Virus record (IMG/VR): IMGVR_UViG_3300009011_000001
Location: 124,001-188,000 of that record
DNA: 64,000 nt
Direction: 5' to 3' (one strand)
A program made the position numbers and the translations under genes. The notes under the pieces were generated by a model, which worked only from the letters and a program-made list of their open reading frames with translations, searched no databases and was not told the origin of the DNA. Below are positions 1,801-19,264 of the stretch, piece by piece (the stretch's first letter is position 1; each line of letters opens with the position of its first letter).

Positions 1801-2283
1801 ATGTTTACAGTTACTCAGAAATACCTTGTAAAGCTGCGTGCCGAGTTCGCACGACTGGATCCGGCTGTCTTCGATAAAGGCATGTGGCAAATCTGCCGTG
1901 CTCTGAACAAGATGCCTGATCTCGTTACCGCGTCCTGCTGCTCGGGCCATGGCGAGCCTGAAAGCACCGCCACTGGTGATTTCTACATCGTCCTGCATGC
2001 AAGCTCTGAGAAGGGCGAGCGTAGCATCGCCAATCTGTACGAATGGTGGTGCAAGTTCCTGGGTACGCAAGTGCTCACGAACGAAGGGATGATGCCGATC
2101 CACCAAACCACCAAACTCGAAGTCAATCGAATCCACGATCGTTTCGAAGAAGGTGAGATCGTCTATGCGTACACGCTCCGTGCCCGCGTCGACAACGATA
2201 TCAACAATTCCGAGCGTCACATCGTTGCCTTTACGAAGGCGGCCGAACGCCTGGGTTTTCTTGATAATCGAAAGACAGCTTAA
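1801..2283 (+). CDS. hypothetical protein with a TYW3-like T-x-S-C-x-x-G-H motif
   Basis: GAGGAG RBS; LNKMPDLVTASCCSGH. Confidence 0.55.
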   Translation: MFTVTQKYLVKLRAEFARLDPAVFDKGMWQICRALNKMPDLVTASCCSGHGEPESTATGDFYIVLHASSEKGERSIANLYEWWCKFLGTQVLTNEGMMPIHQTTKLEVNRIHDRFEEGEIVYAYTLRARVDNDINNSERHIVAFTKAAERLGFLDNRKTA

Positions 2284-2339
2284 GTCCATCGGTGGACAGT
2301 GAGCTAATCTAACATCCTTTCAAGTCCTTAGGAGGACAC

Positions 2340-2468
2340 ATGAAACAATTCAAAATGGCTTTTCTTGGTTTGGTGTTGGGCGTTGTTGGTGCCGTTGGTT
2401 ATTCCAATGGCATCTTTGACGAAGCAGGTCAGGCAAAAGCCGCTCACGCGGCCTTCGCTAAATCGTAG
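2340..2468 (+). CDS. small membrane protein (42 aa)
   Basis: AGGAGG RBS; MKQFKMAFLGLVLGVVGAVGY... Confidence 0.7.
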   Translation: MKQFKMAFLGLVLGVVGAVGYSNGIFDEAGQAKAAHAAFAKS

Positions 2469-2481
2469 TTAAAAAAGCTAC

Positions 2482-2494
2482 AAGTACACATTAC
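2482..2494 (+). promoter_or_regulatory. putative early promoter motif
   Basis: AAGTACACATTAC. Confidence 0.6.
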
Positions 2495-2536
2495 TGACGT
2501 AGATGTGATCCATCTTTTGATCTCTGGAGAAGTACC

Positions 2537-2656
2537 ATGCTTAACATCATCGGTCGTATCGCAACTTCCGTTGTAATCGTTGTCGTGTCCTGCATCATCG
2601 TGGACCAAATCAACAAGCATCACCTGGTCGACAAAGCTGTAGAAAAACTGTCGTAA
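2537..2656 (+). CDS. small membrane protein (39 aa)
   Basis: GGAG RBS; MLNIIGRIATSVVIVVVSCIIVDQ... Confidence 0.65.
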   Translation: MLNIIGRIATSVVIVVVSCIIVDQINKHHLVDKAVEKLS

Positions 2657-2716
2657 TGCTTTGCGCTAAAACAGCTAACCTTTCGCAATAGAAAATCTGT
2701 CCTAGGAGGACTTTGA

Positions 2717-3079
2717 ATGTCTACTCTCGATATCGTTCTGTGCTTGTCGAACATCGCAATGCTGGTTTTCATGGGCGTGGTTGCAAAGACCATGCTCAAG
2801 AAGGGCGTGGCACTCAAAGAAGTAATCATGGATCTGTGCGCCGTCTTCACCTTCACCATGGGTGAGGACCACAAGGCCACAGTTGCGTCGGTCGTGTCGG
2901 TCGTACTCGGTATGATCGTCTTCAACTACTTCTGGCCAGTTCCAGTCTACACAGGCATGTGGATTGTGTTCTGGGTAGTCGGCTGGATTCTGCAAGCCTA
3001 CGTTCGCCTTAGCACTGGCACGCCATTCGGCAACATGGGTCTGTGGGGCATCAAAGCCATCGCTTCATTCATGAAGTAA
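2717..3079 (+). CDS. multi-pass membrane protein
   Basis: AGGAGG RBS; 3-4 hydrophobic segments. Confidence 0.75.
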   Translation: MSTLDIVLCLSNIAMLVFMGVVAKTMLKKGVALKEVIMDLCAVFTFTMGEDHKATVASVVSVVLGMIVFNYFWPVPVYTGMWIVFWVVGWILQAYVRLSTGTPFGNMGLWGIKAIASFMK

Positions 3080-3086
3080 AATGTAT

Positions 3087-3128
3087 GGGGACCTTCGGGT
3101 CCCCGGTACATTCCCATCTTTTTTTTTT
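3087..3128 (+). terminator. intrinsic terminator
   Basis: GGGGACC-TTCG-GGTCCCC followed by a T-tract. Confidence 0.75.
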
Positions 3129-3142
3129 GTCGTAAGGACGCC

Positions 3143-4150
3143 ATGATGCCCAGTTCCAGTAAGAGCCAGTATAAGCTGATGCAGTTCGCTGCTATCAATA
3201 AAGAATTTGCAGAAAAGAAGGGCATCAAACAAGAGACGGCAAAAGAGTGGCATGCTGCCGATCAGGCCAAGAAGAAAGAAGATCCGACCTGGTACGACAA
3301 CCTTCCTGAGAAGTTTGAAAAGAAAAAGAAAGATCGTGGCGAATCAATGGAAGGGTTCCAGTCCTGGCTCTTCCATCTGGTTACTGGCGGTACATTCAAG
3401 GACTCCGACCCTGACCATCCCGACTACTACAAAGAAAAAGAACTCAGCGCTATCGAGAAGATGATCAAGGATGAGAAGATCCTTGACAAGATCGAAATGC
3501 GCGAAGGCAAGATCGATGTCAAGAACATCAATAGCCATTTGCTATTGCGCCACTTCAACGAGTCGAATTGGCTGAGCGAGCTGGAGAAGGGCGTCCTTCA
3601 GATCGACAACTACGCCAACAAGTTCTTCGATGCCCGCCTGCGCTACAGCGACGCTATGCGCAAGGTGTACGAGAAGTGCGAAACCATGAAGCCACAGGAT
3701 GCTTTGGACTACGCCCTTAAGGCCGTACCTCCACTGAAGATGAAGTTGGATGCCATCTCCCCTCCGACCTTCCTGCTGGCAATCAACTCCGAGAAGAAGA
3801 CTCACGGCTACAAGTTCACGGAAGCTAACCCCGGCCCAAGTCCTTTCTACATGGAAGCGCTGTCCAAGGGTCAAGTGAAGAAGCTCTTGACGCTGATGCC
3901 TCACCTGTTCCAAATGGACGGGTTTGGTAACTACGAGCTGGAACATCTGTATTGGACTCTGGACGATACTGACGAACACAAGTGGTGGGCGCATCACTAT
4001 CCTGATGATGACCACATCTGGAGCAAGATGCTGAACCTGTTCCCTTACGCTGGTGAGTTTGATGAGTACGATTACGAGACTCCTCTGAACACCATCATCA
4101 CGAAGATCCGTCGTGGCTGCGAAGAGTTGATCAACAAGTCTGTGAAGTGA
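3143..4150 (+). CDS. probable virion head protein with cleavable N-terminal segment
   Basis: GESMEG site (S-x-E); C-terminal domain resembles the C-terminus of 57096-60521 (ALSKGQV vs ALNAEQI; both end in SVK). Confidence 0.55.
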   Translation: MMPSSSKSQYKLMQFAAINKEFAEKKGIKQETAKEWHAADQAKKKEDPTWYDNLPEKFEKKKKDRGESMEGFQSWLFHLVTGGTFKDSDPDHPDYYKEKELSAIEKMIKDEKILDKIEMREGKIDVKNINSHLLLRHFNESNWLSELEKGVLQIDNYANKFFDARLRYSDAMRKVYEKCETMKPQDALDYALKAVPPLKMKLDAISPPTFLLAINSEKKTHGYKFTEANPGPSPFYMEALSKGQVKKLLTLMPHLFQMDGFGNYELEHLYWTLDDTDEHKWWAHHYPDDDHIWSKMLNLFPYAGEFDEYDYETPLNTIITKIRRGCEELINKSVK

Positions 4151-4153
4151 TAT

Positions 4154-4185
4154 CATACAGCCAGCCCGCAAGGGCTGGCTGTATG
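4154..4185 (+). terminator. CATA...TATG-closed hairpin terminator
   Basis: CATACAGCCAGCCC-GCAA-GGGCTGGCTGTATG. Confidence 0.8.
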
Positions 4186-4200
4186 CTGCTTAAGTATTTT

Positions 4201-4214
4201 GAGTAATACATTAT
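4201..4214 (+). promoter_or_regulatory. putative early promoter motif
   Basis: GAGTAATACATTAT. Confidence 0.6.
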
Positions 4215-4258
4215 TCGCTTGAACGTCTCGTTCCCAACTAAACAAGGATTTGATTTAA

Positions 4259-4666
4259 ATGCGTCCACTTAAACAAGCTATCTACTCTTCCCGTACTGCA
4301 GACAAGTTCGTTATCCGTCTGCCGGATGGCATGCGTGAACGTATCGCCGAAGTTGCCCGTACCCATCACCGTAGCATGAACTCTGAAATCATCGCTCGGT
4401 TGGAACAAAGCCTTATTCAGGAGGAGAAAGAAAAGAACCCAGCAATGATCGTCGGTCCAGGCGATGATGTCCTGATGCCTGCTGTTGATGCGTGGGTCCC
4501 TGTAGCCGGCATGCTCGTCTGCGAGCGTCTGGATACGTCGAAAGTTTACGGCATTAAAGATTTCGATGTGGATAAAGATGGTAAGCTGTATGCCGTCCTC
4601 GGTTCCCTTAAAGGAGAAGAAGCCAAGATGCTGATTGGGCATCTGCAACCGTTCGTTGTAACTTAA
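4259..4666 (+). CDS. amrZ: AmrZ-like Arc/ribbon-helix-helix regulator with a non-AmrZ C-terminal domain
   Basis: First ~55 aa ([52 protein letters not shown]) are nearly identical to the Pseudomonas AmrZ/AlgZ N-terminus as I recall it. Confidence 0.9.
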
Positions 4667-4729
4667 TTTTGTAAATTGTTAGTCCCTCAGGTGATTGTAT
4701 AACAGCACAAAACCACCTGAGGTTTATCC

Positions 4730-5377
4730 ATGCACAAAGGCTTGTTTGTCTCCCTAGAAGGGGGTGAAGGAACAGGTAAGACAACGCAGCGCGAGAAGGT
4801 AGCCGATCACTTCTCAGCGCTGGGTTTGAACGTTGTCAGAACCCGAGAGCCAGGCGGCACCCCTCTGGCTGAAAGGTTCCGCGACATCCTCCTGTCGGAA
4901 CATGACGAAGAGATGAGCGCCAAATGCGAAACGTTGTTGTTCTATGCTGCTCGCGAACAGCATCTGGCGCAAGTAATTCGTCCGCACCTCAACGAGGGCG
5001 CTTTGGTCATCTGCGATCGTTTTGCAGATACCACCGAAGCCTACCAGATGGCTGGCGGTAAAATGGATCCAGATTTCATCAGCGGTCTGCGCAAGCACAT
5101 CGTCGGTGAAACTGAACCTGATCTCGTCATCGTCCTTGTGATGGATGTCGAGAAAGCTTTCCTGCGCGCAGCCGCACGCGGTACGCTCAATCGCATGGAA
5201 GGTAAAGGTCTGGACTACTACAAGGCTGCCCAAGAGCACTTTGTGAAGCTAGCCCACCAGCCTAACTCCCCCTCCTCTTACGCGATCATCAGTGCCGACC
5301 AACCTATCGAGGCGATCTCTGAGCAGATCATCCAAGAAGTGCAGTTGGCGTGGGATCGTAAACACGGCAAGTTCTAA
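4730..5377 (+). CDS. tmk: thymidylate (dTMP) kinase
   Basis: EGGEGTGKTT P-loop, REPGGT, LFYAAR, CDRF motifs. Confidence 0.95.
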   Translation: MHKGLFVSLEGGEGTGKTTQREKVADHFSALGLNVVRTREPGGTPLAERFRDILLSEHDEEMSAKCETLLFYAAREQHLAQVIRPHLNEGALVICDRFADTTEAYQMAGGKMDPDFISGLRKHIVGETEPDLVIVLVMDVEKAFLRAAARGTLNRMEGKGLDYYKAAQEHFVKLAHQPNSPSSYAIISADQPIEAISEQIIQEVQLAWDRKHGKF

Positions 5378-11264: not shown

Positions 11265-13469
11265 ATGAACCTCAATGCCGCTTCTTTGTTTGATCAGATC
11301 AAAGCACAGCTCAAAGATCAGCCCGCTTGTGTGCTCACGATCTATCGCTGGTTCTTCGAAAAGGATCAGCACGTCACGGTCGATATTCCGCTTGTCGACA
11401 AGATCCGTCATCTTCAAGGCGACGGCTTCACTTTCACGCTGGTGGAGGTCATGAGTGCAAGCGGTAAGTTGCGCTACCTGCGCACTGACTTGATGATGGC
11501 CTTTCCGAAACCGGTGGTCGTCAAACCTAGCGTTCTCAGCAATAGGTCAGAACTGCAACAGGAAGAACAACCGGTTCTCCCTTTGAGAACCGAGCCTTAC
11601 GTCCTCGGTGGTCGTGTGCCGGAAGCCATGGTCAAGCATCTTCAGAAGAATGCCGGTCTTCCAACCCGCCGCGCCAGCTCTAAAGTCGAGGACGAAGAAG
11701 CAGCATGATCAATTTCCGACAAACCGATCTTCCGATCTCCTACGAGCCCGTCATCGTCGACTTTCACGATATCAGACCGCCGAACGACGGTCCAATCTAC
11801 ACTGCAGTAATGCAGAAAGACGTTTTCACTGAAGCCATGGTCCGGCTCGATTACAAAGTGTACGGGACTTCGACTATCAGCGATAAGCATCTGCAAGTCG
11901 TCTATCTGCGCAAGGACATGTACGAGAAAGCTCAAGAAGACTTTCTCCGTTCCGATCGCAGTTCTATTGGCACATTTCGAGTGACCCCACAATGAGCAAG
12001 CGCACTAACCCTCACAAACAAGCAATGAAGAAACACGCCGCCGCCATGCACAATGCCCGTTACACGCTGAGCAAGGAGTTTGACGCTCTGGAAGCTGGCC
12101 GTAAGCGCTTCGTGGCCACAACGGCCAATGGCGGCATGGGCGTTGTAACGGAATCATCAAGCGTCTCCACAGGGACTCTGGCGGAGTTCATGGAGAACGG
12201 TAGCCCTGGTGACGTCTACGTTGAACGCGGCATCGAAGTTGTTAAAGACGCCGCCGGCGTGATCGCCGATGACAAACTGGTGATCGGTAACGAAATGAAA
12301 ACTTCGTTGCCACAAGGTTTGCACTTTGCCGGGCACGAACCTCGTGACTATCAATTGCCGGCCATTGCTGCAGCAGAAGCCATGGTGGGCGAACACATCC
12401 CTCGCGGTACCGTGGAAAACTCTGGCGGAATACTGTTTGTCTGTGACAGCATTTCCCCTCTACCGGTGGGTGAAGGCAGCATCGAAGACATTCATGGTGA
12501 ATTCGCGAAGCTGGTGGATGTTGGTCTGCCTTCGACTTTTGCTACGGGCCGATCCAGCGTTTCCGGCTGCTTGCCAGAAGAACTCGGCGTAGGTGCCAAA
12601 CTTCCTCCGGCAGTCATGGAAACCATTGAACGTCGTCTTTCCGAGGAATGAGTCGATGATCGAGAATCACGACAAAAATCAGGTCATCATGTCGGTCGAA
12701 AACTACGAGGCGTTGGTGATTGCCTCCAGTAAGGGCATCGGCATGCTGCCTCGTGAGCTGAATCGAATTAAGCGCCATGTGCGTAAGTTCAATTCGCCTC
12801 AGAAGGAAAAGCGCGCAGCACAGCTGAAAGATGAAGAAACCCGTAAGTGGTGCCTTCGTCAGGAAGCTACAAAGCTCGTAAAGACACATGAAGGCAAGAC
12901 CGTCATCGTTCTGTACAAGTATCCCGACAAGGCTCCTGTTGGCGTTCCAGGAACTCTGAAGGGGTATTCGTCACATGGCGTTGGTTTCGTTGCCGTGCGT
13001 CTCCACAGTCGCGAAATGAAACGCTGTATCCATCTGCTGGCAGAGTTTGTTCTGTCCGTAGAGGAGTACGAATCGATGCAACAAGTCGACATCGCTGAAC
13101 GTCGACGCGAAGCATTTAAACAACTCGCAGAAGAATATCCAAGCGCCTCTTTCGTGCACGAGCTTCGTCCTCAGTCCTAATGAGATGAGCCTTGCAGAGG
13201 TAATTAGGATGGAAACCGTGAGAGTGAATCGGCATCGCTTACTGGTGGGTGATCGGTTTGTTCTGCCTGAAGACCGAGATCGATTGCTCTACGAAGTACA
13301 GGGAAGTCATCCCGAGTCAGGTTTGTTGATCAGACGTATTAAGCATAGCTGGTACGGTTACATGCATCGCGAAACTGGGTTAGTCATTGGGAGTGAAAAG
13401 GGGAGCAGTCTAAAGGAACTGATGACGATTCCTTCGGTTGTTTTGATGCGAGAAGTTGATTTGGCATAA
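11265..13469 (+). CDS. run of five hypothetical CDSs (11265-11708, 11705-11995, 11992-12651, ~12656-13180, 13185-13469)
   Basis: Closely spaced or ATGA-overlapping junctions; no recognisable motifs. Confidence 0.65.
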
Positions 13470-13470
13470 G

Positions 13471-13504
13471 GCATAGAGGCAGGGCGTTTGCCCTGCCTCT
13501 ATGC
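13471..13504 (+). terminator. CATA...TATG-closed hairpin terminator
   Basis: GCATAGAGGCAGGGC-GTTT-GCCCTGCCTCTATGC followed by a T-rich tail. Confidence 0.85.
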
Positions 13505-13533
13505 TGTTTCATTTTCTTTTACTTACTTATTTA

Positions 13534-13547
13534 CAGCAATACATTAC
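13534..13547 (+). promoter_or_regulatory. putative early promoter driving the RKK-peptide operon
   Basis: CAGCAATACATTAC about 30 nt upstream of the GAGGAGG RBS. Confidence 0.65.
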
Positions 13548-13578
13548 GGTATAGACAAACGTAACCTGAGGAGGTTTC

Positions 13579-13806
13579 ATGTCTAAATATAATTCTCTTA
13601 GAAAGAAATACGACGGTCCTAAAAACGAGGACGAGGATAACGGTAGCGCCACAGATCCGGATGATAGCTTGGAGGAAAGGGATTTCGTCAGTCTAGACAA
13701 TTACTTTCATCCCAGAGCGCAGGCAGCCGATAGAGATGCAGCCCTGATCACGCGCAGTAAACAACGGGATGCTGACGTCGTCTATACTTTTAGCAGGTTC
13801 AGATAA
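13579..13806 (+). CDS. RKK-motif small charged protein 1
   Basis: GAGGAGG RBS; MSKYNSLRKKYD...DNGS. Confidence 0.75.
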   Translation: MSKYNSLRKKYDGPKNEDEDNGSATDPDDSLEERDFVSLDNYFHPRAQAADRDAALITRSKQRDADVVYTFSRFR

Positions 13807-14021
13807 TGGCCGATATAGATAGAAAGAAATACGACCCTCTTAAAGTTAGCGATATAGAAAATGGCTCAGGAAGCTATATCCCTGATGCACATCTGTGGTG
13901 TCCGTCGTCCAGGGATCCGGATAATCGAACGACTATCCTAGATCGGGATAGCGACGAGGCAAAAAATGTAAAGCGAGGATATAAGTTCATCGTCCACGCC
14001 AGCCACGTCAGGTGCGATTAG
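13806..14021 (+). CDS. RKK-motif small charged protein 2
   Basis: TAATG overlap; MADIDRKKYD...ENGS. Confidence 0.75.
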   Translation: MADIDRKKYDPLKVSDIENGSGSYIPDAHLWCPSSRDPDNRTTILDRDSDEAKNVKRGYKFIVHASHVRCD

Positions 14022-14022
14022 G

Positions 14023-14265
14023 ATGGATGTTCTCAGAAAGAAAATGCGCCTTCCATTGAGAGATGATCGCATAGAGTTAGGTCAGGATGCGAATGGCTGC
14101 TTTGAGCAGATGTGCAAGTGCGCAGGTCATGAGCCCATTCACGATTGGGATGCTGAGCCAGATGAAGACGTACTTTCGTGCGACGATCCTGATCTGAGCC
14201 ACGCCCGTTACGAAAGGATTCATCTCTCAGAGGCCAATAACGCATGGGACTTTACGGTGGAGTAA
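14023..14265 (+). CDS. RKK-motif small charged protein 3
   Basis: MDVLRKKM...ANGC...AWDFTVE. Confidence 0.75.
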   Translation: MDVLRKKMRLPLRDDRIELGQDANGCFEQMCKCAGHEPIHDWDAEPDEDVLSCDDPDLSHARYERIHLSEANNAWDFTVE

Positions 14266-14268
14266 GCG

Positions 14269-14487
14269 ATGCCAGCCAGAAGTAAAAAGTTTTTGGTTAA
14301 CGAACATACTGCCGGTTTGAGAGGCGGACTCCGCGCTTACAGCGAAGACATTGATAGAAAGGTCGGATCTGCCGAAATTTACACCTACGACTCTGAAGAG
14401 ACGGCGTACATCAGAGACAGGGATGATGGCGCACCCACCCGTTCAAAAATTGATCAATCCCCGAGGGATCGTGATGCACGACATTAG
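14269..14487 (+). CDS. RKK-motif small charged protein 4
   Basis: GGAG RBS; MPARSKKF. Confidence 0.65.
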   Translation: MPARSKKFLVNEHTAGLRGGLRAYSEDIDRKVGSAEIYTYDSEETAYIRDRDDGAPTRSKIDQSPRDRDARH

Positions 14488-14728
14488 ACGTAAGTCAATG
14501 CCGGCACGTTACGTGGGCGGATGCGAGGAAGGTCGCCAAACCCTAGACGATGAAGTCTCGATTCAGCGAACCCTGGATGGCGATCCCGAAACAGGTAACC
14601 GGCCGTTCGACGTTGAGCGTTATGACAAGAGTGTTCTCAAAGATGGAGATTTTCGGCGAAACTTTGAACGTGATCGGCAACTGAAACTACCCGACCGGGT
14701 ATGGACAAACAAATGGGCAAGAGAATAA
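14474..14728 (+). CDS. RKK-motif small charged protein 5
   Basis: GAGGG RBS; MHDIRRKS...GGCEEG. Confidence 0.7.
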   Translation: MHDIRRKSMPARYVGGCEEGRQTLDDEVSIQRTLDGDPETGNRPFDVERYDKSVLKDGDFRRNFERDRQLKLPDRVWTNKWARE

Positions 14729-14973
14729 GTGCTGATCGCAAGAAAAACCTTGTCTGGATTGGAGAAGAATTCGTCGCCCACGATAACGGCTTGAAAACTC
14801 CAGGAAACTATGGACGGTGTATCGAGGCTTTTGATGGTGTTCATCGAGAAGGTAACGAACCACGCGATAGAGAGCAGATCGAAAGCGTAAAGCTCGATAA
14901 CGATCGTTATAGAAGACTGGATATTTCGAACATGCACTTTCGAGATCCGTTGGAGGACTACACACGACCCTAG
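14713..14973 (+). CDS. RKK-motif small charged protein 6
   Basis: MGKRISADRKKN...DNG...GRC. Confidence 0.7.
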   Translation: MGKRISADRKKNLVWIGEEFVAHDNGLKTPGNYGRCIEAFDGVHREGNEPRDREQIESVKLDNDRYRRLDISNMHFRDPLEDYTRP

Positions 14974-14981
14974 GAGGCTGT

Positions 14982-15251
14982 ATGTATTTCGTAGATAGAA
15001 AGAACGACCAACCTTGTCGACCGTTACCGGGCGATTCTCGTGGCACTAGCACTTTGGAAGGACCAGTTCTTTATAAGTGGATAGGCGAAGGAGATAAAGC
15101 CGAAGGCTGCGGTGATGAAGACCCAGATGAAGTTAAGCGCCGGCAGGGCTATCTTCAGGACGGAGATGAGGATAGAGAGTGGCCTCAGAAAACACTGAGA
15201 GCGCAGTGCCGGCAATCAGACCTTAGTCTTTGGGATTGGACAGTAGAATGA
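14982..15251 (+). CDS. RKK-motif small charged protein 7
   Basis: AGGAGG RBS; MYFVDRKND...EGCG...LWDWTVE. Confidence 0.75.
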   Translation: MYFVDRKNDQPCRPLPGDSRGTSTLEGPVLYKWIGEGDKAEGCGDEDPDEVKRRQGYLQDGDEDREWPQKTLRAQCRQSDLSLWDWTVE

Positions 15252-16603
15252 AACACGATCCCCTTAGAAAGAAGGCAGAACGTTGGTTCATGTCTGTGGT
15301 AAATGGCAAAAACCCACGGGAAACATTGCCACCAGAAACATATTTGCATTACTGGATCCCTGACTATGTCGAAAGTGATCCAGAGCTTATTGTCCACGAA
15401 TCTGTACGCGTCCTCGATTTCGACAAATACCGAGCCTGTAATAATCCTTCATTTATCGGCTTCCCTGATGCAACAAATAACCAAGGAGTAAACATGAAAG
15501 GCGATTTCCTTCCTGTACCGCAATCCGAAGCTCTGATTGCAAACATCAATTCGTGGAACGATAAACTGGCGCTGCTGCGCGGCGATAACATCTACGATGT
15601 CTCCCGCCTGTTCTTCTCGTCCAAAGGCTGGAATGCTCACCAGTACAATCTGGTGGCCGACATTCCTTACGGCAGCAGCGTAGCCGAGAACGACCGCAAA
15701 GTGCTGAAGGTTGTTGAAGAAGAGATCCTCAAGCCGAAGGGTCTGCACTTCATTCGTACTTTGATGGGTCGTCTGGTCTGCAACGACACCGAAATCCTCG
15801 GCTCGTTCGTCAACCCAAGCAACAGCGCCACCCAGTCCAAGTACGACATCATCGGCACCGAAAAGCTGGCAAGCTATTTCCGCGATGTCTTCAAAGAACA
15901 CATCGACAACGGCAAGACTGCGTATCTGCGCCGTCTGACTCTGGCTGACCGTAACATCACGTCCACCATCGAGACCATCCCTCCGGTCGAAGGCATCCCG
16001 GACATCATGAAGTTCTACCCGTACTTCGAGCGCAGCCCTGAACAGCTTATCGCTGAGTTCATGGCCTCCACCTCGAACGTACTGCTGCTGATCGGCCCGC
16101 CGGGCACCGGTAAGTCCAACTACATCCTGCAAATGATGAAGGCCCGTGGCTGGGATGACAAGATCCACCTGGCTGACCGTGAAGACGTTCTTCTTAACCC
16201 TGGTCTGTCCGACTATGTGCGCAACTGCGAAGCCGGCTCTGTGGTCATCACGGAAGACTCCGATAAGTTGGTACGTTCCCGTGAGCAGGATAACGAGAAC
16301 ATGTCGGCGCTCCTCAATGCCACGGCAGGTATCGTTAGCCGCGATGTGAAGATCATCATCTCCACCAACCTGGAATCTCTGACCTATGTCGACAAGGCAC
16401 TGACCCGCCCCGGTCGTTGCTTCGATATTCTGAAATTCCAAAGCCTGACGACTCAGCAGGCGCTGGACGTGCGTGAAATGATGGGCCTGGAATACATGGA
16501 CATCGAAGAAAAAGAAGCGACTCTGGCAGAAGCTTTGAAGTACCACGAAATCCACCGTGACCGCGTACCGAAGAAACAAGCATTCGGTTTTGCGAGGGCG
16601 TAA
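15248..16603 (+). CDS. AAA+ ATPase (internal start at 15494) with an in-frame N-terminal RKK module 8
   Basis: ATGA overlap at 15248 (MKHDPLRKKA); AAGGAG RBS before ATG 15494; GPPGTGKS Walker A, VITEDSD Walker B, STN sensor, ALTRPGRC arginine finger. Confidence 0.85.
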   Translation: MKHDPLRKKAERWFMSVVNGKNPRETLPPETYLHYWIPDYVESDPELIVHESVRVLDFDKYRACNNPSFIGFPDATNNQGVNMKGDFLPVPQSEALIANINSWNDKLALLRGDNIYDVSRLFFSSKGWNAHQYNLVADIPYGSSVAENDRKVLKVVEEEILKPKGLHFIRTLMGRLVCNDTEILGSFVNPSNSATQSKYDIIGTEKLASYFRDVFKEHIDNGKTAYLRRLTLADRNITSTIETIPPVEGIPDIMKFYPYFERSPEQLIAEFMASTSNVLLLIGPPGTGKSNYILQMMKARGWDDKIHLADREDVLLNPGLSDYVRNCEAGSVVITEDSDKLVRSREQDNENMSALLNATAGIVSRDVKIIISTNLESLTYVDKALTRPGRCFDILKFQSLTTQQALDVREMMGLEYMDIEEKEATLAEALKYHEIHRDRVPKKQAFGFARA

Positions 16604-16658
16604 TGCTGTGACCCGTATGTCGTAGTCCTGAGGCTACGGCGCATTCTGTGAGGTGTGT

Positions 16659-16910
16659 ATGAGCGTTGTAGAATTGGAAGACCTGCGTCAAAATCTTCTC
16701 GCCATCCTCAAAGAAAAGATGAGTGACAAGATCTTCGACCATACGCCACATGGCGTATTGGCTGACTATCTAGAGGTTCCGTTGGCTGAGGTTTCGACCT
16801 TGATGACAGGGAACATGCTTAAACTTCAATTGTCGACCATCGTCGCCGTAGCCCATTTCTGCGGTAAACAAGTCCGAACAACACTGATAGAAGAAAAGGA
16901 AGTTGCTTGA
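16659..16910 (+). CDS. XRE/HigA-like helix-turn-helix protein
   Basis: LADYLEVPLAEVSTLMTG...L.TIV..A...GKQV pattern. Confidence 0.55.
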   Translation: MSVVELEDLRQNLLAILKEKMSDKIFDHTPHGVLADYLEVPLAEVSTLMTGNMLKLQLSTIVAVAHFCGKQVRTTLIEEKEVA

Positions 16911-17362
16911 TGTCGAACTTTATCAATAATCAAACAGGCAAGCCTGTCGAAGAAACCACCGTACTTTTGGAGGTCGGCGTACCTACGAGCATTAGCGGCA
17001 AAACCTACCTTTTAGATGCAAGCTTGCGTGCAGCAGTTCGCGCACTGCAAGGCAAGAAGATCCACATGCAGTTCGGCAGTCCCGGCAGCAACGCCAACGC
17101 TCTGGACCAAAGCCGTACCTGCGGCCTGATCGAGAACGTTCGTCTGATCGAATGCCGTCAGACGAAAGGCACTGGCGTTATCATCGGTGATGTGAAGCCA
17201 TGGGGTCCTTTCGGCGTCCATGTGCGCGATTGCATCAGCGGCGCCGAACCACATCCTTCGTACTACGGCCTGCACGCCATGGTCAGCGCTCCAGTCGGTG
17301 GCGATGGCATGGTGCGGTCTGTTCGAGAAATCGTCAGCTGGTACATGGTCAGTAAGAACTAA
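16907..17362 (+). CDS. hypothetical protein, possible degenerate prohead-protease-fold homolog
   Basis: IIGDVKPWGPFG...YYGLHA...IVSWY resembles phiKZ-type head protease segments; catalytic residues not evident. Confidence 0.35.
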   Translation: MMSNFINNQTGKPVEETTVLLEVGVPTSISGKTYLLDASLRAAVRALQGKKIHMQFGSPGSNANALDQSRTCGLIENVRLIECRQTKGTGVIIGDVKPWGPFGVHVRDCISGAEPHPSYYGLHAMVSAPVGGDGMVRSVREIVSWYMVSKN

Positions 17363-17456: not shown

Positions 17457-18131
17457 ATGATGATTGATAACGTAGTGAGTATCACGAAGTACAAGAAGGC
17501 CGATGACGAACTTACGTTCATGCATGAGTTTAAGATGCCTCCGGATGCTCTACTCATGGACTTTCCGATGCAGCTCGAGCTGCTGAAAGATCGCTGTTGG
17601 GGCTTGTGTAACAGCGGCAATCCCTCTGGCATCCACATCCATCGGTTACTTGGCCTGACTGAGAAGATGTTCGCAAACATCTGTTTTTCGTTAGACGAGC
17701 CTTTGTTCATGCGGATCTATAAAGATCCGAAAAACGAACTTGTCTTCATGGTTCGTGTGCTTTCAAATTACCTGTTTGAAATAGGTAATGCTGTCAAAAA
17801 AGGAAGCCCCGAACCCAAGCCTCTCTTCGATGCCAAGATCTATTTCTTCGAAATGACGTGCGATCATCCAGAAATGTTCATCGAACCTCCGGCGGTTATG
17901 GCCGGCGAGATTGTTGAGCACTGGCACCTCCCGGCTAGTTTCTACGGCCGGGCATCAGAGCAGTTAACTGATCGCATCGTCAAGAACATGAATACGGTCA
18001 CCACAACGAACTGCGGCTTTGCAAAGATTGTAGATAACACGTACGTGGCAGTGATTCCTCACAGTGAGAAGTATTGCATTCTGATGACGCTTTGCCTGAA
18101 AGATAACCTTCCGACTAATGGAGTAGAGTAA
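17457..18131 (+). CDS. hypothetical protein
   Basis: ORF; start placed downstream of the hairpin. Confidence 0.65.
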   Translation: MMIDNVVSITKYKKADDELTFMHEFKMPPDALLMDFPMQLELLKDRCWGLCNSGNPSGIHIHRLLGLTEKMFANICFSLDEPLFMRIYKDPKNELVFMVRVLSNYLFEIGNAVKKGSPEPKPLFDAKIYFFEMTCDHPEMFIEPPAVMAGEIVEHWHLPASFYGRASEQLTDRIVKNMNTVTTTNCGFAKIVDNTYVAVIPHSEKYCILMTLCLKDNLPTNGVE

Positions 18132-19264
18132 TGCCTTTAATCGTTACAGACGAAGATACGAACTTCCTTGTCCAGAATATCAATCTGGCTCGGAAAGTAG
18201 ACAAGCTGCCGGCGATGGTTTATACGCCGGTAATGACCGACGAAGGTCCTCGTCTGATCAAAGGTCGTGAAAGCTTCGAAGTACCTGAAAACCCTCTGGG
18301 CGACCACAACGTCATCCGTGACCTGATCATCAGCGATTACAACAGCGTCAAGTCGCCGGTCGGTGTGATCTTGGTGGGCCTCAAGGGCTCCGGCAAGACC
18401 ATGTTGTCTGAAGACCTGTGCAACAAGATCCTGGAAACCGGTCGCCCTGTACTGAACGTCACCAGCCCTCTGCCGGGCGGTATCCTCTCCACCATGATCG
18501 ACCTGCTCGGGCCATGCGCCGTGCTGTTCGACGAATTCGGTAAAGTCTACGACGACTCCGAGAAACGTAACACTGTGCTGACTCTGTTCAGCGACTCCGA
18601 AAAGCGCAACATCCTCTTTATCGTTACGGCCAACAGCGAGCGCGAATTCGTCGACGCCATGCTGAACCGCCCTGGTCGCTTCAAGTACCGCGTGAACTAC
18701 GACGGTATTAAAGAAAAGACCGTGATGGACACCATCAGCCACAAGGACCATTCCCCTGAGCTGCTCGAGTATCTGCGCCTATATTCGACCTATCACGCGA
18801 TCAGTTACGACATGCTGCTTCTGATGAAGAAGCTGTTGAAGAAGTGCAAGACTCCGCAGGACTTCATCGACAAGATCGAGTTCTACAACCTGCCGGCCAA
18901 GGTCAACGTTCGTTACGGCGTGAAGTCCGTGACCTATGGCGGGAGCACCAGCGAATATAAAGGCTGGATCGATATCCAGGAAGACGGGTCCCTGCAGCTG
19001 GAACTTACCAATGTCGCCAATGGCGAAGTGGTACATAGCCAGAAACTGGTCTGGGCCGATGTAGAAAAGGTCAAGCGCGGCAACTTCTGGCAGCTCAAGT
19101 TCGACGACTCTTTCAAGATCGAGGTGGAACGAGATGTCAGCGAGCACACATTTCGGCCGAAAGAAAGGGATCATGGTACTCCCAAGTATCAAGGGTTCCG
19201 CCACCCGGAAGACGACCTGGAATTCCGTCAAAACGATTACAAGGAACCTGTGAAACGGTTCTAG
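18131..19264 (+). CDS. AAA+ ATPase
   Basis: GLKGSGKT, VLFDEF, VTAN, NRPGRF. Confidence 0.9.
   Translation: MPLIVTDEDTNFLVQNINLARKVDKLPAMVYTPVMTDEGPRLIKGRESFEVPENPLGDHNVIRDLIISDYNSVKSPVGVILVGLKGSGKTMLSEDLCNKILETGRPVLNVTSPLPGGILSTMIDLLGPCAVLFDEFGKVYDDSEKRNTVLTLFSDSEKRNILFIVTANSEREFVDAMLNRPGRFKYRVNYDGIKEKTVMDTISHKDHSPELLEYLRLYSTYHAISYDMLLLMKKLLKKCKTPQDFIDKIEFYNLPAKVNVRYGVKSVTYGGSTSEYKGWIDIQEDGSLQLELTNVANGEVVHSQKLVWADVEKVKRGNFWQLKFDDSFKIEVERDVSEHTFRPKERDHGTPKYQGFRHPEDDLEFRQNDYKEPVKRF

What the first reader, a model, noticed from the sequence alone, without database searches (positions are those of the whole stretch)
15248..16603. Eighth RKK module reads in frame into the AAA+ ATPase, allowing two isoforms
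Seen: MKHDPLRKKA... starts at 15248 by ATGA overlap with peptide 7 and has no stop before the ATPase. The ATPase also has its own AAGGAG RBS and ATG at 15494, and codon usage switches at that point. Inference: both RKK-tagged and untagged ATPase could be made, a gene-fusion hint that the array and ATPase form one module. Alternatively, a stop codon was recently lost.
Basis: partly seen in the sequence, partly recalled or inferred. Interest (0 to 1): 0.65.

Follow-up and report, generated by a model that had tools for sequence, protein, structure and literature searches.

The report
Small-protein module fused to phage ATPase
In an uncultivated phiKZ-like giant phage, the last of eight small "RKK" genes runs in frame into a Bcs1-like AAA+ ATPase that keeps its own ribosome-binding site. 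Relatives conserve this arrangement, so it very probably yields a tagged and an untagged ATPase and ties the gene array to that enzyme.

Summary
ORF 15248-16603 (451 aa) is open. It starts by an ATGA overlap with module 7. AAGGAG (15483-15488) sits 5 nt before an in-frame ATG at 15494, and codon usage switches there (GC3 0.41 to 0.70).

The fusion is neither an error nor a recent stop loss. Four other contigs from other samples carry it, and a more distant 308-kb phage carries one of its own. Synonymous sites between the fused genomes are near saturation, yet the leader stays open and shows pN below pS. The AGGAG-N5-ATG block is conserved even at third codon positions (5/6 codons against 8/65 elsewhere, p=5e-4). 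Both starts therefore appear to be selected, which makes 51-kDa and 42-kDa isoforms likely. Neither protein has been observed.

The leader carries the RKK family's motifs but lacks its C-terminal motif and stop. It is predicted to be disordered. RKK arrays lie directly upstream of this ATPase in at least eight related contigs, fused or unfused.

The ATPase has a classical AAA domain closest to Bcs1/YjoB. It has no membrane anchor and no demonstrable Bcs1 N-domain. The function of the RKK proteins is unknown, and binding to the ATPase is inferred only.

The parts
13470..13505 (+). Intrinsic terminator (16-bp stem plus T-run) that closes the upstream unit. It marks the 5' border of the array-ATPase transcription unit.
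   Evidence: The hairpin is conserved in L016, L005 and L009.
13531..13561 (+). Conserved roughly 30-nt motif (TTACAGCAATACATTACGGTATAGACAAAC) 18-48 nt before the first module. Candidate phage promoter (inference).
   Evidence: Alignment A5: nearly identical in the window, L004 and L016, and largely so in L005, while the flanks differ. No sigma-70 match.
13579..13806 (+). RKK module 1 (75 aa)
13806..14021 (+). RKK module 2 (71 aa)
14023..14265 (+). RKK module 3 (80 aa); ends ...WDFTVE
14269..14487 (+). RKK module 4 (72 aa; motif degenerated to SKK)
14474..14728 (+). RKK module 5 (84 aa; motif RRK). It overlaps module 4 by 14 nt.
   Evidence: Ortholog in L004 is 63% identical.
14701..14973 (+). 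RKK module 6 (90 aa; RKK at residues 13-15); ends ...DYTRP
14982..15251 (+). RKK module 7 (89 aa; motif RKN); ends ...WDWTVE. Its TGA stop overlaps the next start.
15248..15493 (+). RKK module 8, the leader of the long isoform (82 aa). It has RKK at residues 7-9, then NG, SDPE and LDFDKYR motifs, but no family C-terminal motif and no stop. Its last roughly 8 codons read through what is the ATPase 5'-UTR in unfused relatives.
   Evidence: AF2 gives pLDDT under 50 for residues 20-75 and a weak helix at 5-18.
15483..15488 (+). Internal Shine-Dalgarno AAGGAG, 5 nt before ATG 15494
   Evidence: AGGAG is invariant in 4 fused genomes. Third codon positions are identical in 5/6 codons here against 8/65 in the rest of the leader, p=5e-4. 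No sequestering RNA structure (z=-0.96).
15494..16603 (+). ATPase core, the short isoform (369 aa, 41.7 kDa): an alpha/beta N-domain followed by a classical AAA domain. Homolog of phiKZ gp208 and Phabio gp308.
15248..16603 (+). Full fused ORF, the long isoform (451 aa, 51.3 kDa)
16094..16117 (+). Walker A motif GPPGTGKS (long-form residues 283-290)
   Evidence: invariant G283, G286, G288, K289 in alignment A2
16241..16264 (+). Walker B motif VVITEDSD (residues 332-339)
   Evidence: invariant E336, D337, D339
16406..16417 (+). RPGR arginine-finger motif of the second region of homology (residues 387-390)
   Evidence: invariant R387, G389, R390

Best explanation
The window comes from a 248.6-kb phiKZ-like jumbo phage genome with terminal repeats.

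Shown: a single transcription unit appears to start after the terminator at 13470-13505. It carries eight tightly packed paralogous genes for small (71-90 aa), very hydrophilic proteins that are predicted to be disordered. I call these RKK modules. Their pattern is M-x(3-12)-RKK ... G ... DP[DE] ... DxDxxR ... aromatic-T-x-[EP]-stop. A classical-clade AAA+ ATPase follows, with an AAA domain closest to Bcs1/YjoB. The eighth module has lost the family's C-terminal motif and its stop. It reads through the former 5'-UTR of the ATPase gene into the ATPase frame. This state is old and maintained.

Inferred mechanism: ribosomes that finish module 7 restart at the ATGA overlap (15248) and make a 451-aa, 51-kDa ATPase with a flexible RKK module on its N-terminus. 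Ribosomes that bind the conserved internal AGGAG start at 15494 and make the 369-aa, 42-kDa core. The codon-usage step is weak adaptation in the leader and strong adaptation from the first core codon. It suggests that most ATPase chains start internally. Rings would then be mostly short subunits with a minority of RKK-bearing ones, as in ClpB long/short hetero-oligomers.

The conserved adjacency and the fusion imply that RKK proteins work with this ATPase, as substrates, adaptors or regulators, with the fused copy as a tethered version. The arrays are hypervariable and mosaic, while the ATPase is conserved. This fits a host-interaction or counter-defence role.
For: 1. Open frame, ATGA overlap, internal SD and ATG.

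2. The same 451-aa architecture occurs in P0002/L004 (77% identity) and P0003/L008 (73%). L016 carries a 444-aa version. L011 (P0004) has at least 14 open in-frame codons up to its contig end. These come from different samples. A 437-aa fusion with its own RKK leader and a GTGA overlap occurs in the distant L007 (52% identity).

3. Age and selection: dS among the fused genomes is 0.9-2.1. Leader dN/dS is 0.28-0.39, against 0.11-0.12 for the core. pN is below pS with p from 4e-6 to 0.03 in 5 of 6 pairs. Leader length differences are multiples of 3 (246, 246, 246 and 225 nt). The other frames hold 2-8 stops.

4. Internal start under selection: AGGAG-N5-ATG is invariant in 4 fused genomes although the encoded residues differ (Q/L, V/A, N/S). 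Third positions are identical in 5/6 codons against 8/65, p=5e-4. The same GGAGTxAACATG serves the unfused ATPase in L005. The SD is unpaired in the predicted fold.

5. The codon step at the internal ATG occurs in the window, L004, L008 and L007.

6. The leader belongs to the family. It has RKK at the family's position, and the Arg codons vary (AGA, CGT, CGC, CGG), so the constraint acts on the protein. NG, DPE and DxDxxR align. In an HMM built from free modules only, three of the four leaders outrank the other genome ORFs tested; the L004 leader was not among the listed hits.

7. Linkage: arrays of small ORFs lie directly upstream of the ATPase in the window, L004, L016, L008, L005/L006, L009, L015, L007 and L010. 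In L010 the RKK motif is degenerate.

8. Mosaicism: the L004 and L016 cores are 97% identical (pS 0.35), but their leaders are 31% identical (pS 0.86). The nucleotide break lies about 39 nt before the internal ATG, and both remain fused in frame.

9. ATPase identity and intact catalytic motifs.
Against: No protein, RNA or ribosome data exist for this uncultivated phage. The look-up of sequencing runs found no RNA run, so neither isoform has been observed.

The start at 15248 has no good SD of its own and depends on coupling, so the long form could be rare.

AF2 does not dock the leader onto the core (pLDDT under 50). The complex prediction of ATPase with module 7 gave no verdict.

In L007 the internal SD is weak (GGAA at 10 nt), so dual initiation may not hold for every fusion.

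The ML tree needs two changes of the fused state. However, the AU test does not reject a single clade of all fused genes (p=0.145), so independent recurrence of the fusion is not established.

Viable transposon insertions in phiKZ orf208, a 39% homolog, show that the ATPase family is dispensable in the laboratory (PMC12676376).
Confidence: 0.7

Rival explanations
1. Tolerated read-through without function. The stop of module 8 was deleted once. The resulting N-terminal tail is harmless because it is disordered. The working enzyme is the short form made from the internal start, and the long form is a minor by-product.
For: The leader is predicted to be disordered and evolves fast (31-55% identity against 81-97% for the core). 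It is exchanged by recombination. It has poor codon adaptation. Unfused relatives manage without it.
Against: Under neutrality, stops and frameshifts should have accumulated over dS of about 1-2. Instead, five contigs keep 75-82 open codons with pN below pS. L004 and L016 differ by a module swap yet both stay in frame. A second, distant lineage (L007) is also fused. However, pN below pS could merely reflect selection on module 8 as a protein, whatever it is attached to.
Confidence: 0.17
2. Only the long protein is made. The internal AGGAG-ATG is a fossil of the pre-fusion start, now just codons for G-V-N-M.
For: The long ORF is conserved. L007 has only a weak internal SD.
Against: A fossil SD should have decayed at synonymous sites, which are saturated elsewhere. 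Instead, third positions are conserved in 5/6 codons against 8/65, and AGGAG survives amino-acid replacements around it. The codon-adaptation step at exactly 15494 in four genomes suggests different ribosome traffic upstream and downstream.
Confidence: 0.1
3. Artefact, or a very recent stop loss in this one assembly.
For: Metagenome-assembled genome; only contigs, not raw reads, could be laid.
Against: The same fusion occurs in independent assemblies from other samples at 73-77% protein identity. Logan's contig of the source run is identical. An approximately 90%-identical variant in a 2023 soil run spans 15044-15497 with paired, frame-restoring 1-nt indels and no stop among the listed differences.
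Confidence: 0.02

Closest known systems
ClpB (95/80-kDa forms) and ClpA (84/65-kDa forms) of E. coli: AAA+ proteins made in two sizes from an in-frame internal start (from my own knowledge, not tested here)
   Same: One ORF with two in-frame starts. The short form lacks an N-terminal substrate or adaptor-facing part. Mixed rings are expected. The internal start has its own ribosome-binding site.
   Different: Here the extra N-terminal part is not an integral domain of the ATPase family. It is a captured member of a neighbouring small-gene array. It is disordered, hypervariable and absent in sister phages. The upstream start works by ATGA coupling to another gene.
Phage T7 gene 4A/4B, a hexameric NTPase with long and short forms from an internal SD and ATG (from my own knowledge)
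   Same: A phage ring NTPase in which both isoforms come from one ORF through an internal SD-led start.
   Different: In T7 the extra part is a zinc-finger primase element with a known role. Here it is an RKK module of unknown function. The NTPase superfamily also differs (RecA-like helicase against classical AAA).
Mitochondrial Bcs1 and B. subtilis YjoB (AAA proteins with a family-specific N-domain); 'BCS1 orthologs' of jumbo phages noted by Iyer et al. 2021 (PMC7824862)
   Same: The only PDB sequence matches are Bcs1 (E=5e-5, AAA domain). The best whole-chain Foldseek matches are Bcs1 (E=5e-12, about 370 columns) and YjoB. YjoB gives the best VIA Z score (14.7) for residues 223-442. The segment between Walker A and Walker B is short, as in Bcs1. 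PMC7824862 proposes that phage Bcs1-like proteins move folded proteins during assembly.
   Different: There is no transmembrane anchor (maximum 19-aa hydropathy 1.25). Pfam finds no BCS1_N match. The N-domain folded alone finds no Bcs1 among the top 50; the best match is a KA1 domain at Z 6.7. On the AAA domain alone, proteasomal Rpt subunits tie with YjoB and Bcs1 (Z 13-14.5).
phiKZ gp208 (PHIKZ208) and Phabio gp308 ('putative ATP-binding protein'); phrog_14322
   Same: Orthologous ATPase: 39% identity (phiKZ) and 56% (Phabio) from long-form residue 93 or 112 onward. Phabio also has an array of five 82-92-aa ORFs upstream.
   Different: Neither is fused. phiKZ has no such array. Phabio's small ORFs carry an EARVEN-type motif rather than RKK, and an RNA ligase gene separates them from the ATPase.
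Rosetta-stone gene fusions (Marcotte/Enright-type inference; from my own knowledge)
   Same: Two components are separate neighbouring genes in some genomes (L005, L009, L012, L015) and one ORF in others (the window's clade, L007).
   Different: The fused partner is one of many paralogs. The fusion also keeps the downstream gene's own start, so both the fused and the free states are probably expressed from one genome.

Membership tests
Classical AAA ATPase (Pfam PF00004) | Pfam AAA domain above the gathering score | tested here: met
   36.5 bits against a cut-off of 21.2, E=8e-9
Classical AAA ATPase (Pfam PF00004) | Walker A GxxGxGK[ST], Walker B acidic pair, sensor-1 Asn, and arginine fingers in the second region of homology | tested here: met
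   GPPGTGKS at 283-290, VVITEDSD at 332-339, STN at 372-374, RPGR at 387-390. These are invariant across 79 homologs.
Bcs1/YjoB-type AAA | AAA domain closer to Bcs1 than to other AAA families | tested here: inconclusive
   By sequence, only Bcs1 chains pass E<=1e-3 in the PDB, and Foldseek ranks Bcs1 and YjoB first. By VIA Z scores, however, YjoB (14.7) and Bcs1 (13.2-13.4) tie with Rpt subunits (13-14.5).
Bcs1/YjoB-type AAA | Bcs1-specific N-terminal (middle) domain, Pfam BCS1_N | tested here: not met
   No BCS1_N match at E<=0.1. The N-domain model (pLDDT 89.5) has no Foldseek match at E<=1e-3 and no Bcs1 among the top 50 VIA matches; the best is a KA1 domain at Z 6.7. Only two whole-chain rows extend into residues 130-222.
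Bcs1/YjoB-type AAA | N-terminal transmembrane anchor (mitochondrial Bcs1) | tested here: not met
   The highest 19-residue Kyte-Doolittle mean is 1.25, and it lies in the strand before Walker A.
Bcs1/YjoB-type AAA | Heptameric (Bcs1) or hexameric (YjoB) ring | not testable with these tools
   Needs purified protein.
Dual-initiation AAA+ (ClpB/ClpA type) | In-frame internal start codon with its own ribosome-binding site inside a longer ORF | tested here: met
   AAGGAG at 15483-15488 and ATG at 15494 inside ORF 15248-16603. The block is conserved beyond coding needs.
Dual-initiation AAA+ (ClpB/ClpA type) | Both polypeptides detected in cells | not testable with these tools
   No RNA or protein data exist for this metagenomic phage.
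RKK small-protein family (defined here) | R-K-K, or a one-residue variant, within the first roughly 15 residues after a hydrophobic-x pair | tested here: met
   The leader has L-RKK at residues 6-9. The same holds in 30 of 35 aligned modules (R6 and K7 nearly invariant). The genome background is 11/2923.
RKK small-protein family (defined here) | Central G...T, DP[DE] and DxDxxR motifs in order | tested here: met
   The leader's NG, SDPE and LDFDKYR align with the family consensus.
RKK small-protein family (defined here) | C-terminal aromatic-T-x-[EP] followed directly by the stop (present in many but not all members) | tested here: not met
   The leader ends ...SFIGFPDATNNQGVN and continues into the ATPase.
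RKK small-protein family (defined here) | Significant score against an HMM built from free modules only | tested here: inconclusive
   Leader E-values are 0.0017 (L008), 0.046 (window) and 0.57 (L007). The L004 leader is not among the listed hits. The best unrelated ORF of the genome scores E=3.5 among about 720.
Rosetta-stone fusion | The two parts exist as separate adjacent genes in related genomes | tested here: met
   L005/L006: stop plus 47-nt spacer. L009: stop plus 18 nt. L012: one TAA plus 9 nt, in the same frame. L015: unfused.

The most novel reading that the evidence does not exclude
RKK modules are a hypervariable, recombining set of disordered small proteins whose shared N-terminal RKK tag is the handle by which the phage's Bcs1-like AAA+ ring engages them, as cargo or as target-specific adaptors. 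Dual initiation builds a few subunits with a permanently tethered module into each ring. This would be a previously undescribed adaptor-array plus AAA+ machine of nucleus-forming-type jumbo phages, plausibly serving counter-defence or host takeover.
Probability: 0.25. Interest if true: 0.75.

Novelty: new variant of a known kind. Interest (0 to 1): 0.55.

Why it matters
Jumbo phages of the phiKZ type carry hundreds of genes of unknown function, among them conserved AAA+ ATPases with no known partners. This locus is a natural experiment: a small-gene family sits next to such an ATPase and has been fused to it, in one clade and in a distant phage.

That nominates concrete partners for the ATPase. 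It also names a short N-terminal motif (RKK) to test as a recognition tag.

The RKK family is absent from Pfam and PHROGs. A profile search of 1.84 billion representative proteins found it only in this phage group, so it is a new family.

The conserved internal start adds a clean comparative example of selection keeping two in-frame starts. The example was detected without any expression data.

The arrays are mosaic and fast-evolving beside a conserved motor. That pattern is typical of host-interaction genes and gives a lead for anti-defence screens.

Tried and rejected
- **DNA and pattern searches:** Megablast of 13400-16700 against the phage collection found no match. The search for related loci in viral contigs with the single ATPase protein found none.
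- **Family scans of the modules:** Pfam and PHROGs gave no hit for the leader or for the six free modules scanned.
- **Profile searches:** The word-index search with the RKK profile returned only training members. The exhaustive profile search found 12 proteins. All come from the same phage group except a 648-aa repeat protein with a chance HRKK repeat.
- **ESM Atlas, module 7:** Its own model has pLDDT 0.33, and there are no look-alikes at 0.9 or above.
- **Complex prediction, ATPase core plus module 7:** No verdict (ipSAE 0.00). This counts neither for nor against binding.
- **RNA fold around the internal start:** No structure beyond shuffles (z=-0.96). A riboswitch-like or occlusion mechanism was therefore dropped.
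- **Nucleotide-level reading of RKK (AGAAAGAAA as an RNA or DNA signal):** Rejected, because other lineages use CGT, CGC or CGG for the Arg.
- **Independent origin of the L007 fusion:** The ML tree needs 2 changes, but AU gives p=0.145, so this is left open.
- **Bcs1 N-domain membership:** Not supported when the domain is folded alone.
- **Chimallin:** tblastn with phiKZ gp54 gave no hit, although homologs of gp69 and of gp55, gp68 and gp74 (RNA-polymerase subunits or neighbouring phiKZ genes) are present.
- **Literature:** Nothing on the function of phiKZ gp208 beyond a viable transposon insertion.
- Only contigs were available, so raw-read heterogeneity near 15480 could not be examined. No alternative genetic code was used.
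Full report
**What the window is.** The window is positions 124001-188000 of a 248,574-bp virus record with direct terminal repeats. The genome has 52% GC. It encodes homologs of phiKZ gp69 and of gp55, gp68 and gp74, which are RNA-polymerase subunits or neighbouring phiKZ genes. tblastn with the phiKZ shell protein gp54 found nothing. No deposited phage is close at the DNA level. By protein, the ATPase is 54-56% identical to gp308 of Pseudomonas phage Phabio and 39-40% identical to phiKZ gp208. This is therefore an uncultivated phiKZ-like jumbo phage. Its probable source is a rhizosphere metagenome.

**Checking the observation.**
- One frame is open from ATG 15248 to the stop at 16601-16603. 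It encodes 451 aa (51.3 kDa).
- The ATG overlaps the TGA of the preceding 89-aa ORF as ATGA.
- AAGGAG lies at 15483-15488, 5 nt before the in-frame ATG 15494. That start would give 369 aa (41.7 kDa).
- Codon usage changes abruptly at 15494. The leader has GC3 0.41 and CAI 0.61, matching the seven free small ORFs (GC3 0.42-0.53, CAI 0.60-0.64). The first 82 codons of the core have GC3 0.67 and CAI 0.80, and the whole core has 0.70 and 0.83.
- The other two frames of the leader contain 3 and 7 stops.
- Logan's independent assembly of the probable source run matches 13400-16700 without a difference.

**The array is a real protein family.** Seven free ORFs (13579-15251) and the leader share a pattern: M, then 3-12 residues, then R-K-K (variants SKK, RRK, RKN), a Gly about 12 residues later, DP[DE], and DxDxxR. 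Many free members also end in aromatic-T-x-[E/P] directly before the stop.
- The Arg codon of the motif is AGA in this lineage but CGT, CGC or CGG in others. The conservation therefore acts on the protein, not on the RNA or DNA.
- RKK within residues 3-16 occurs at 11 of 2923 ATG-led ORF starts in the genome. Six of those rows (5 genes) lie in this array.
- The proteins are very hydrophilic (GRAVY -0.6 to -1.7), with about 35-40% charged residues. The ESM Atlas model of module 7 has pLDDT 0.33. They are probably disordered on their own.
- Orthologous modules between the window and L004 are 41-65% identical, and synonymous sites are saturated.
- Pfam and PHROGs do not know the family. A profile search of 1.84 billion representative proteins found only 12 matches, all from this phage group apart from one chance repeat protein.

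**The leader is the eighth member.** It has L-RKK at residues 6-9, then NG, SDPE and LDFDKYR in the family's order. Its length is typical (82 aa), and so are its codon usage and its ATGA junction. In an HMM built only from free modules, the leaders of L008 (E=0.0017), the window (0.046) and L007 (0.57) rank above the other genome ORFs tested, of which the best scores 3.5. The L004 leader was not among the listed hits. What the leader lacks is the C-terminal motif and the stop.

**The fusion is conserved.** The word-index protein search found two further 451-aa proteins, 77% and 73% identical over their full length (P0002, P0003). Their contigs L004 and L008 show the same ATGA overlap, the same 82-codon leader and the same internal ATG.
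- L016 was reached through a module-7 ortholog and carries a 444-aa fusion.
- L011 (P0004) is cut by its contig end, but its 14 upstream codons are open, in frame, and homologous to the end of the leader.
- A 2023 soil run holds an approximately 90%-identical variant spanning 15044-15497. Its 1-nt indels come in frame-restoring pairs, and none of the listed substitutions creates a stop.
- These five ATPases form one clade with 99/98 support.
- In the 308-kb contig L007 (ATPase 52% identical), a different RKK leader (VIHDINRKKD...) starts by a GTGA overlap and is also fused, giving 437 aa.

**Unfused relatives.** These keep the last module separate.
- L005/L006: stop plus a 47-nt AT-rich spacer.
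- L009: stop plus 18 nt.
- L012: a single TAA plus 9 nt, with the upstream ORF in the ATPase frame.
- L015: ten RKK modules, unfused.

On the ML tree the fused state changes twice. The AU test does not reject a single fused clade (p=0.145), so I do not claim independent origins.

**Old and selected, not a recent stop loss.** Between the fused genomes, dS is 0.9-2.1 in the leader and about 1 in the core. Leader dN/dS is 0.28-0.39, against 0.11-0.12 for the core. With the SD block removed, pN is below pS in all six pairs and significantly so in five (p from 4e-6 to 0.03). Leader lengths are 246, 246, 246 and 225 nt.

The comparison of L004 with L016 is the most telling. Their cores are 97% identical (pS 0.35), while their leaders are 31% identical (pS 0.86). 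Nucleotide similarity of 90.6% begins about 39 nt upstream of the internal ATG. The module part was evidently exchanged or is of different descent, yet both genomes are fused in frame.

**The internal start is also selected.** AGGAG-N5-ATG is invariant in the four complete fused genomes, although the residues it encodes differ (Q/L, V/A, N/S). Third codon positions are identical in 5 of the 6 codons before the ATG, against 8 of 65 in the rest of the leader (Fisher p=5e-4).
- The same GGAGTxAACATG is the initiation region of the unfused ATPase in L005. The last roughly 8 leader codons are therefore former 5'-UTR (inference).
- The SD is unpaired in the predicted RNA fold, and no special structure is present.
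- The codon-adaptation step at the internal ATG recurs in L004, L008 and L007. Because synonymous sites have turned over, this step reflects current selection. It suggests that more ribosomes read the core than the leader, so the short form predominates (inference).

**Transcription unit.** A strong terminator at 13470-13505 precedes the array. No terminator is predicted on the + strand between the array and the ATPase. A roughly 30-nt motif at 13531-13561 is conserved upstream of the first module in the window, L004, L016 and L005. It is a candidate phage promoter (inference).

**The ATPase.** It matches PF00004 (E=8e-9) and phrog_14322 (E=8e-114).
- Walker A, Walker B, sensor-1 and RPGR are intact, and they are invariant in 79 homologs.
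- The AF2 model has mean pLDDT 84. Residues 90-440 are mostly above 90. The leader is below 50 apart from a weak helix at 5-18.
- The only PDB sequence matches are Bcs1 (E=5e-5). Foldseek ranks Bcs1 (E=5e-12) and B. subtilis YjoB first. VIA gives YjoB Z 14.7 for residues 223-442, but proteasomal Rpt subunits tie.
- There is no transmembrane segment and no BCS1_N match. The N-domain folded alone (pLDDT 89.5) finds no Bcs1; its best match is a KA1-type alpha/beta domain at Z 6.7.
- I therefore describe it as a classical-clade AAA+ protein with a Bcs1/YjoB-like AAA module and an N-domain of its own kind. I do not call it a Bcs1 ortholog.
- Iyer et al. (PMC7824862) listed 'BCS1 orthologs' in jumbo phages and proposed translocation of folded proteins during assembly.
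- A phiKZ transposon study recovered viable insertions in orf208 (PMC12676376). The family is therefore dispensable in the laboratory, as expected for an accessory, host-dependent function.

**Most likely mechanism.**
- Shown: the conserved fusion, the conserved internal SD and ATG, the codon step, the array-ATPase linkage, and the mosaic, fast-evolving array beside a conserved motor.
- Inferred: the long form is made by coupled reinitiation at 15248 and the short form from 15494. Mixed rings carry a minority of subunits with a flexible RKK module at the N-terminal face. Free RKK proteins act on or through the same ring.
- Not shown: any binding. The complex prediction gave no verdict, and AF2 did not dock the leader.

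**Comparison and novelty.** Two sizes from in-frame internal starts are known for ClpB, ClpA and T7 gp4 (from my own knowledge). Gene fusion as a sign of partnership is also a known principle.

Three things are new here. The first is the RKK family itself. The second is its conserved position before a jumbo-phage AAA+ gene. The third is that the fusion captured a neighbouring paralog while keeping the downstream gene's own start, so one locus probably gives both the fused and the free state. I rate this a new variant of a known kind, with interest 0.55.

**Limits.** There are no expression data, and only contigs could be laid on the window. The deeper branches of the ATPase tree are weakly supported.

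Noticed in passing
window 13400-16609 (run X2): A 2023 soil metagenome holds contigs identical to the window over 13400-14956. Over 15044-15497 (module 7 and the leader) they differ by about 10%, and over the ATPase by 2-6%. Either the phage population is mosaic or two strains are present.
   Followed up: partly
L004:3611 / L016:4453, which corresponds to about window 15455: There is a sharp similarity break between two relatives. Identity is 90.6% from about 39 nt before the internal ATG onward, and under 72% or undetectable upstream. The recombination or hypervariability boundary therefore lies inside the fused ORF, at the old 5'-UTR of the ATPase gene.
   Followed up: yes
window 14245-14265, 14953-14973, 15230-15251 and the module ends in L004, L005, L008, L009: Many free modules end in aromatic-T-x-[E/P] directly before the stop (WDFTVE, DYTRP, WDWTVE, DYTRE, NCYTE). 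The codons differ, so this C-terminal motif is conserved at the protein level. Its meaning is unknown.
   Followed up: partly
window 18131-19264: A second, unrelated AAA ATPase (377 aa; PF00004 at E=1.4e-6; phrog_2376 at E=9e-49) lies 1.5 kb downstream. It is syntenic in L004 and L005.
   Followed up: partly
window 16907-17362: This 151-aa ORF sits where the syntenic genes of L004, L005 and L016 carry a Pfam Peptidase_S80 (phiKZ prohead-protease family) hit, weak in L004 and L016. At 146-156 aa it is far shorter than a full protease.
   Followed up: no
L004:1316-1915: A GIY-YIG / I-TevI-like homing-endonuclease gene (weak Pfam hits) sits directly upstream of the array in L004. It is absent at that place in the window.
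   Followed up: no
L001 (Phabio) 2022-3357 and 3370-4797: Phabio has five 82-92-aa ORFs at the equivalent place. They carry an EARVEN/ARNE-type N-terminal motif instead of RKK, and an RNA ligase gene is inserted between them and the ATPase. This may be a different small-protein family in the same slot.
   Followed up: partly
window 13185-13469: The 94-aa ORF just before the terminator is well conserved in L005/L006 (METIRVNRHRLLVGDRF...). It is not an RKK module.
   Followed up: no
whole genome (G000): Homologs of phiKZ gp69 (E=5e-22), gp55, gp68 and gp74 are present. Neither genome search nor tblastn at 1e-3 found the phiKZ nuclear-shell protein gp54. The shell protein is either very divergent or absent.
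   Followed up: partly
window 16081-16118: Short unrelated contigs from both runs pile up on the Walker A (P-loop) coding stretch and then run off into unlike sequence. This is a conserved-motif artefact of laying contigs, not a junction.
   Followed up: yes
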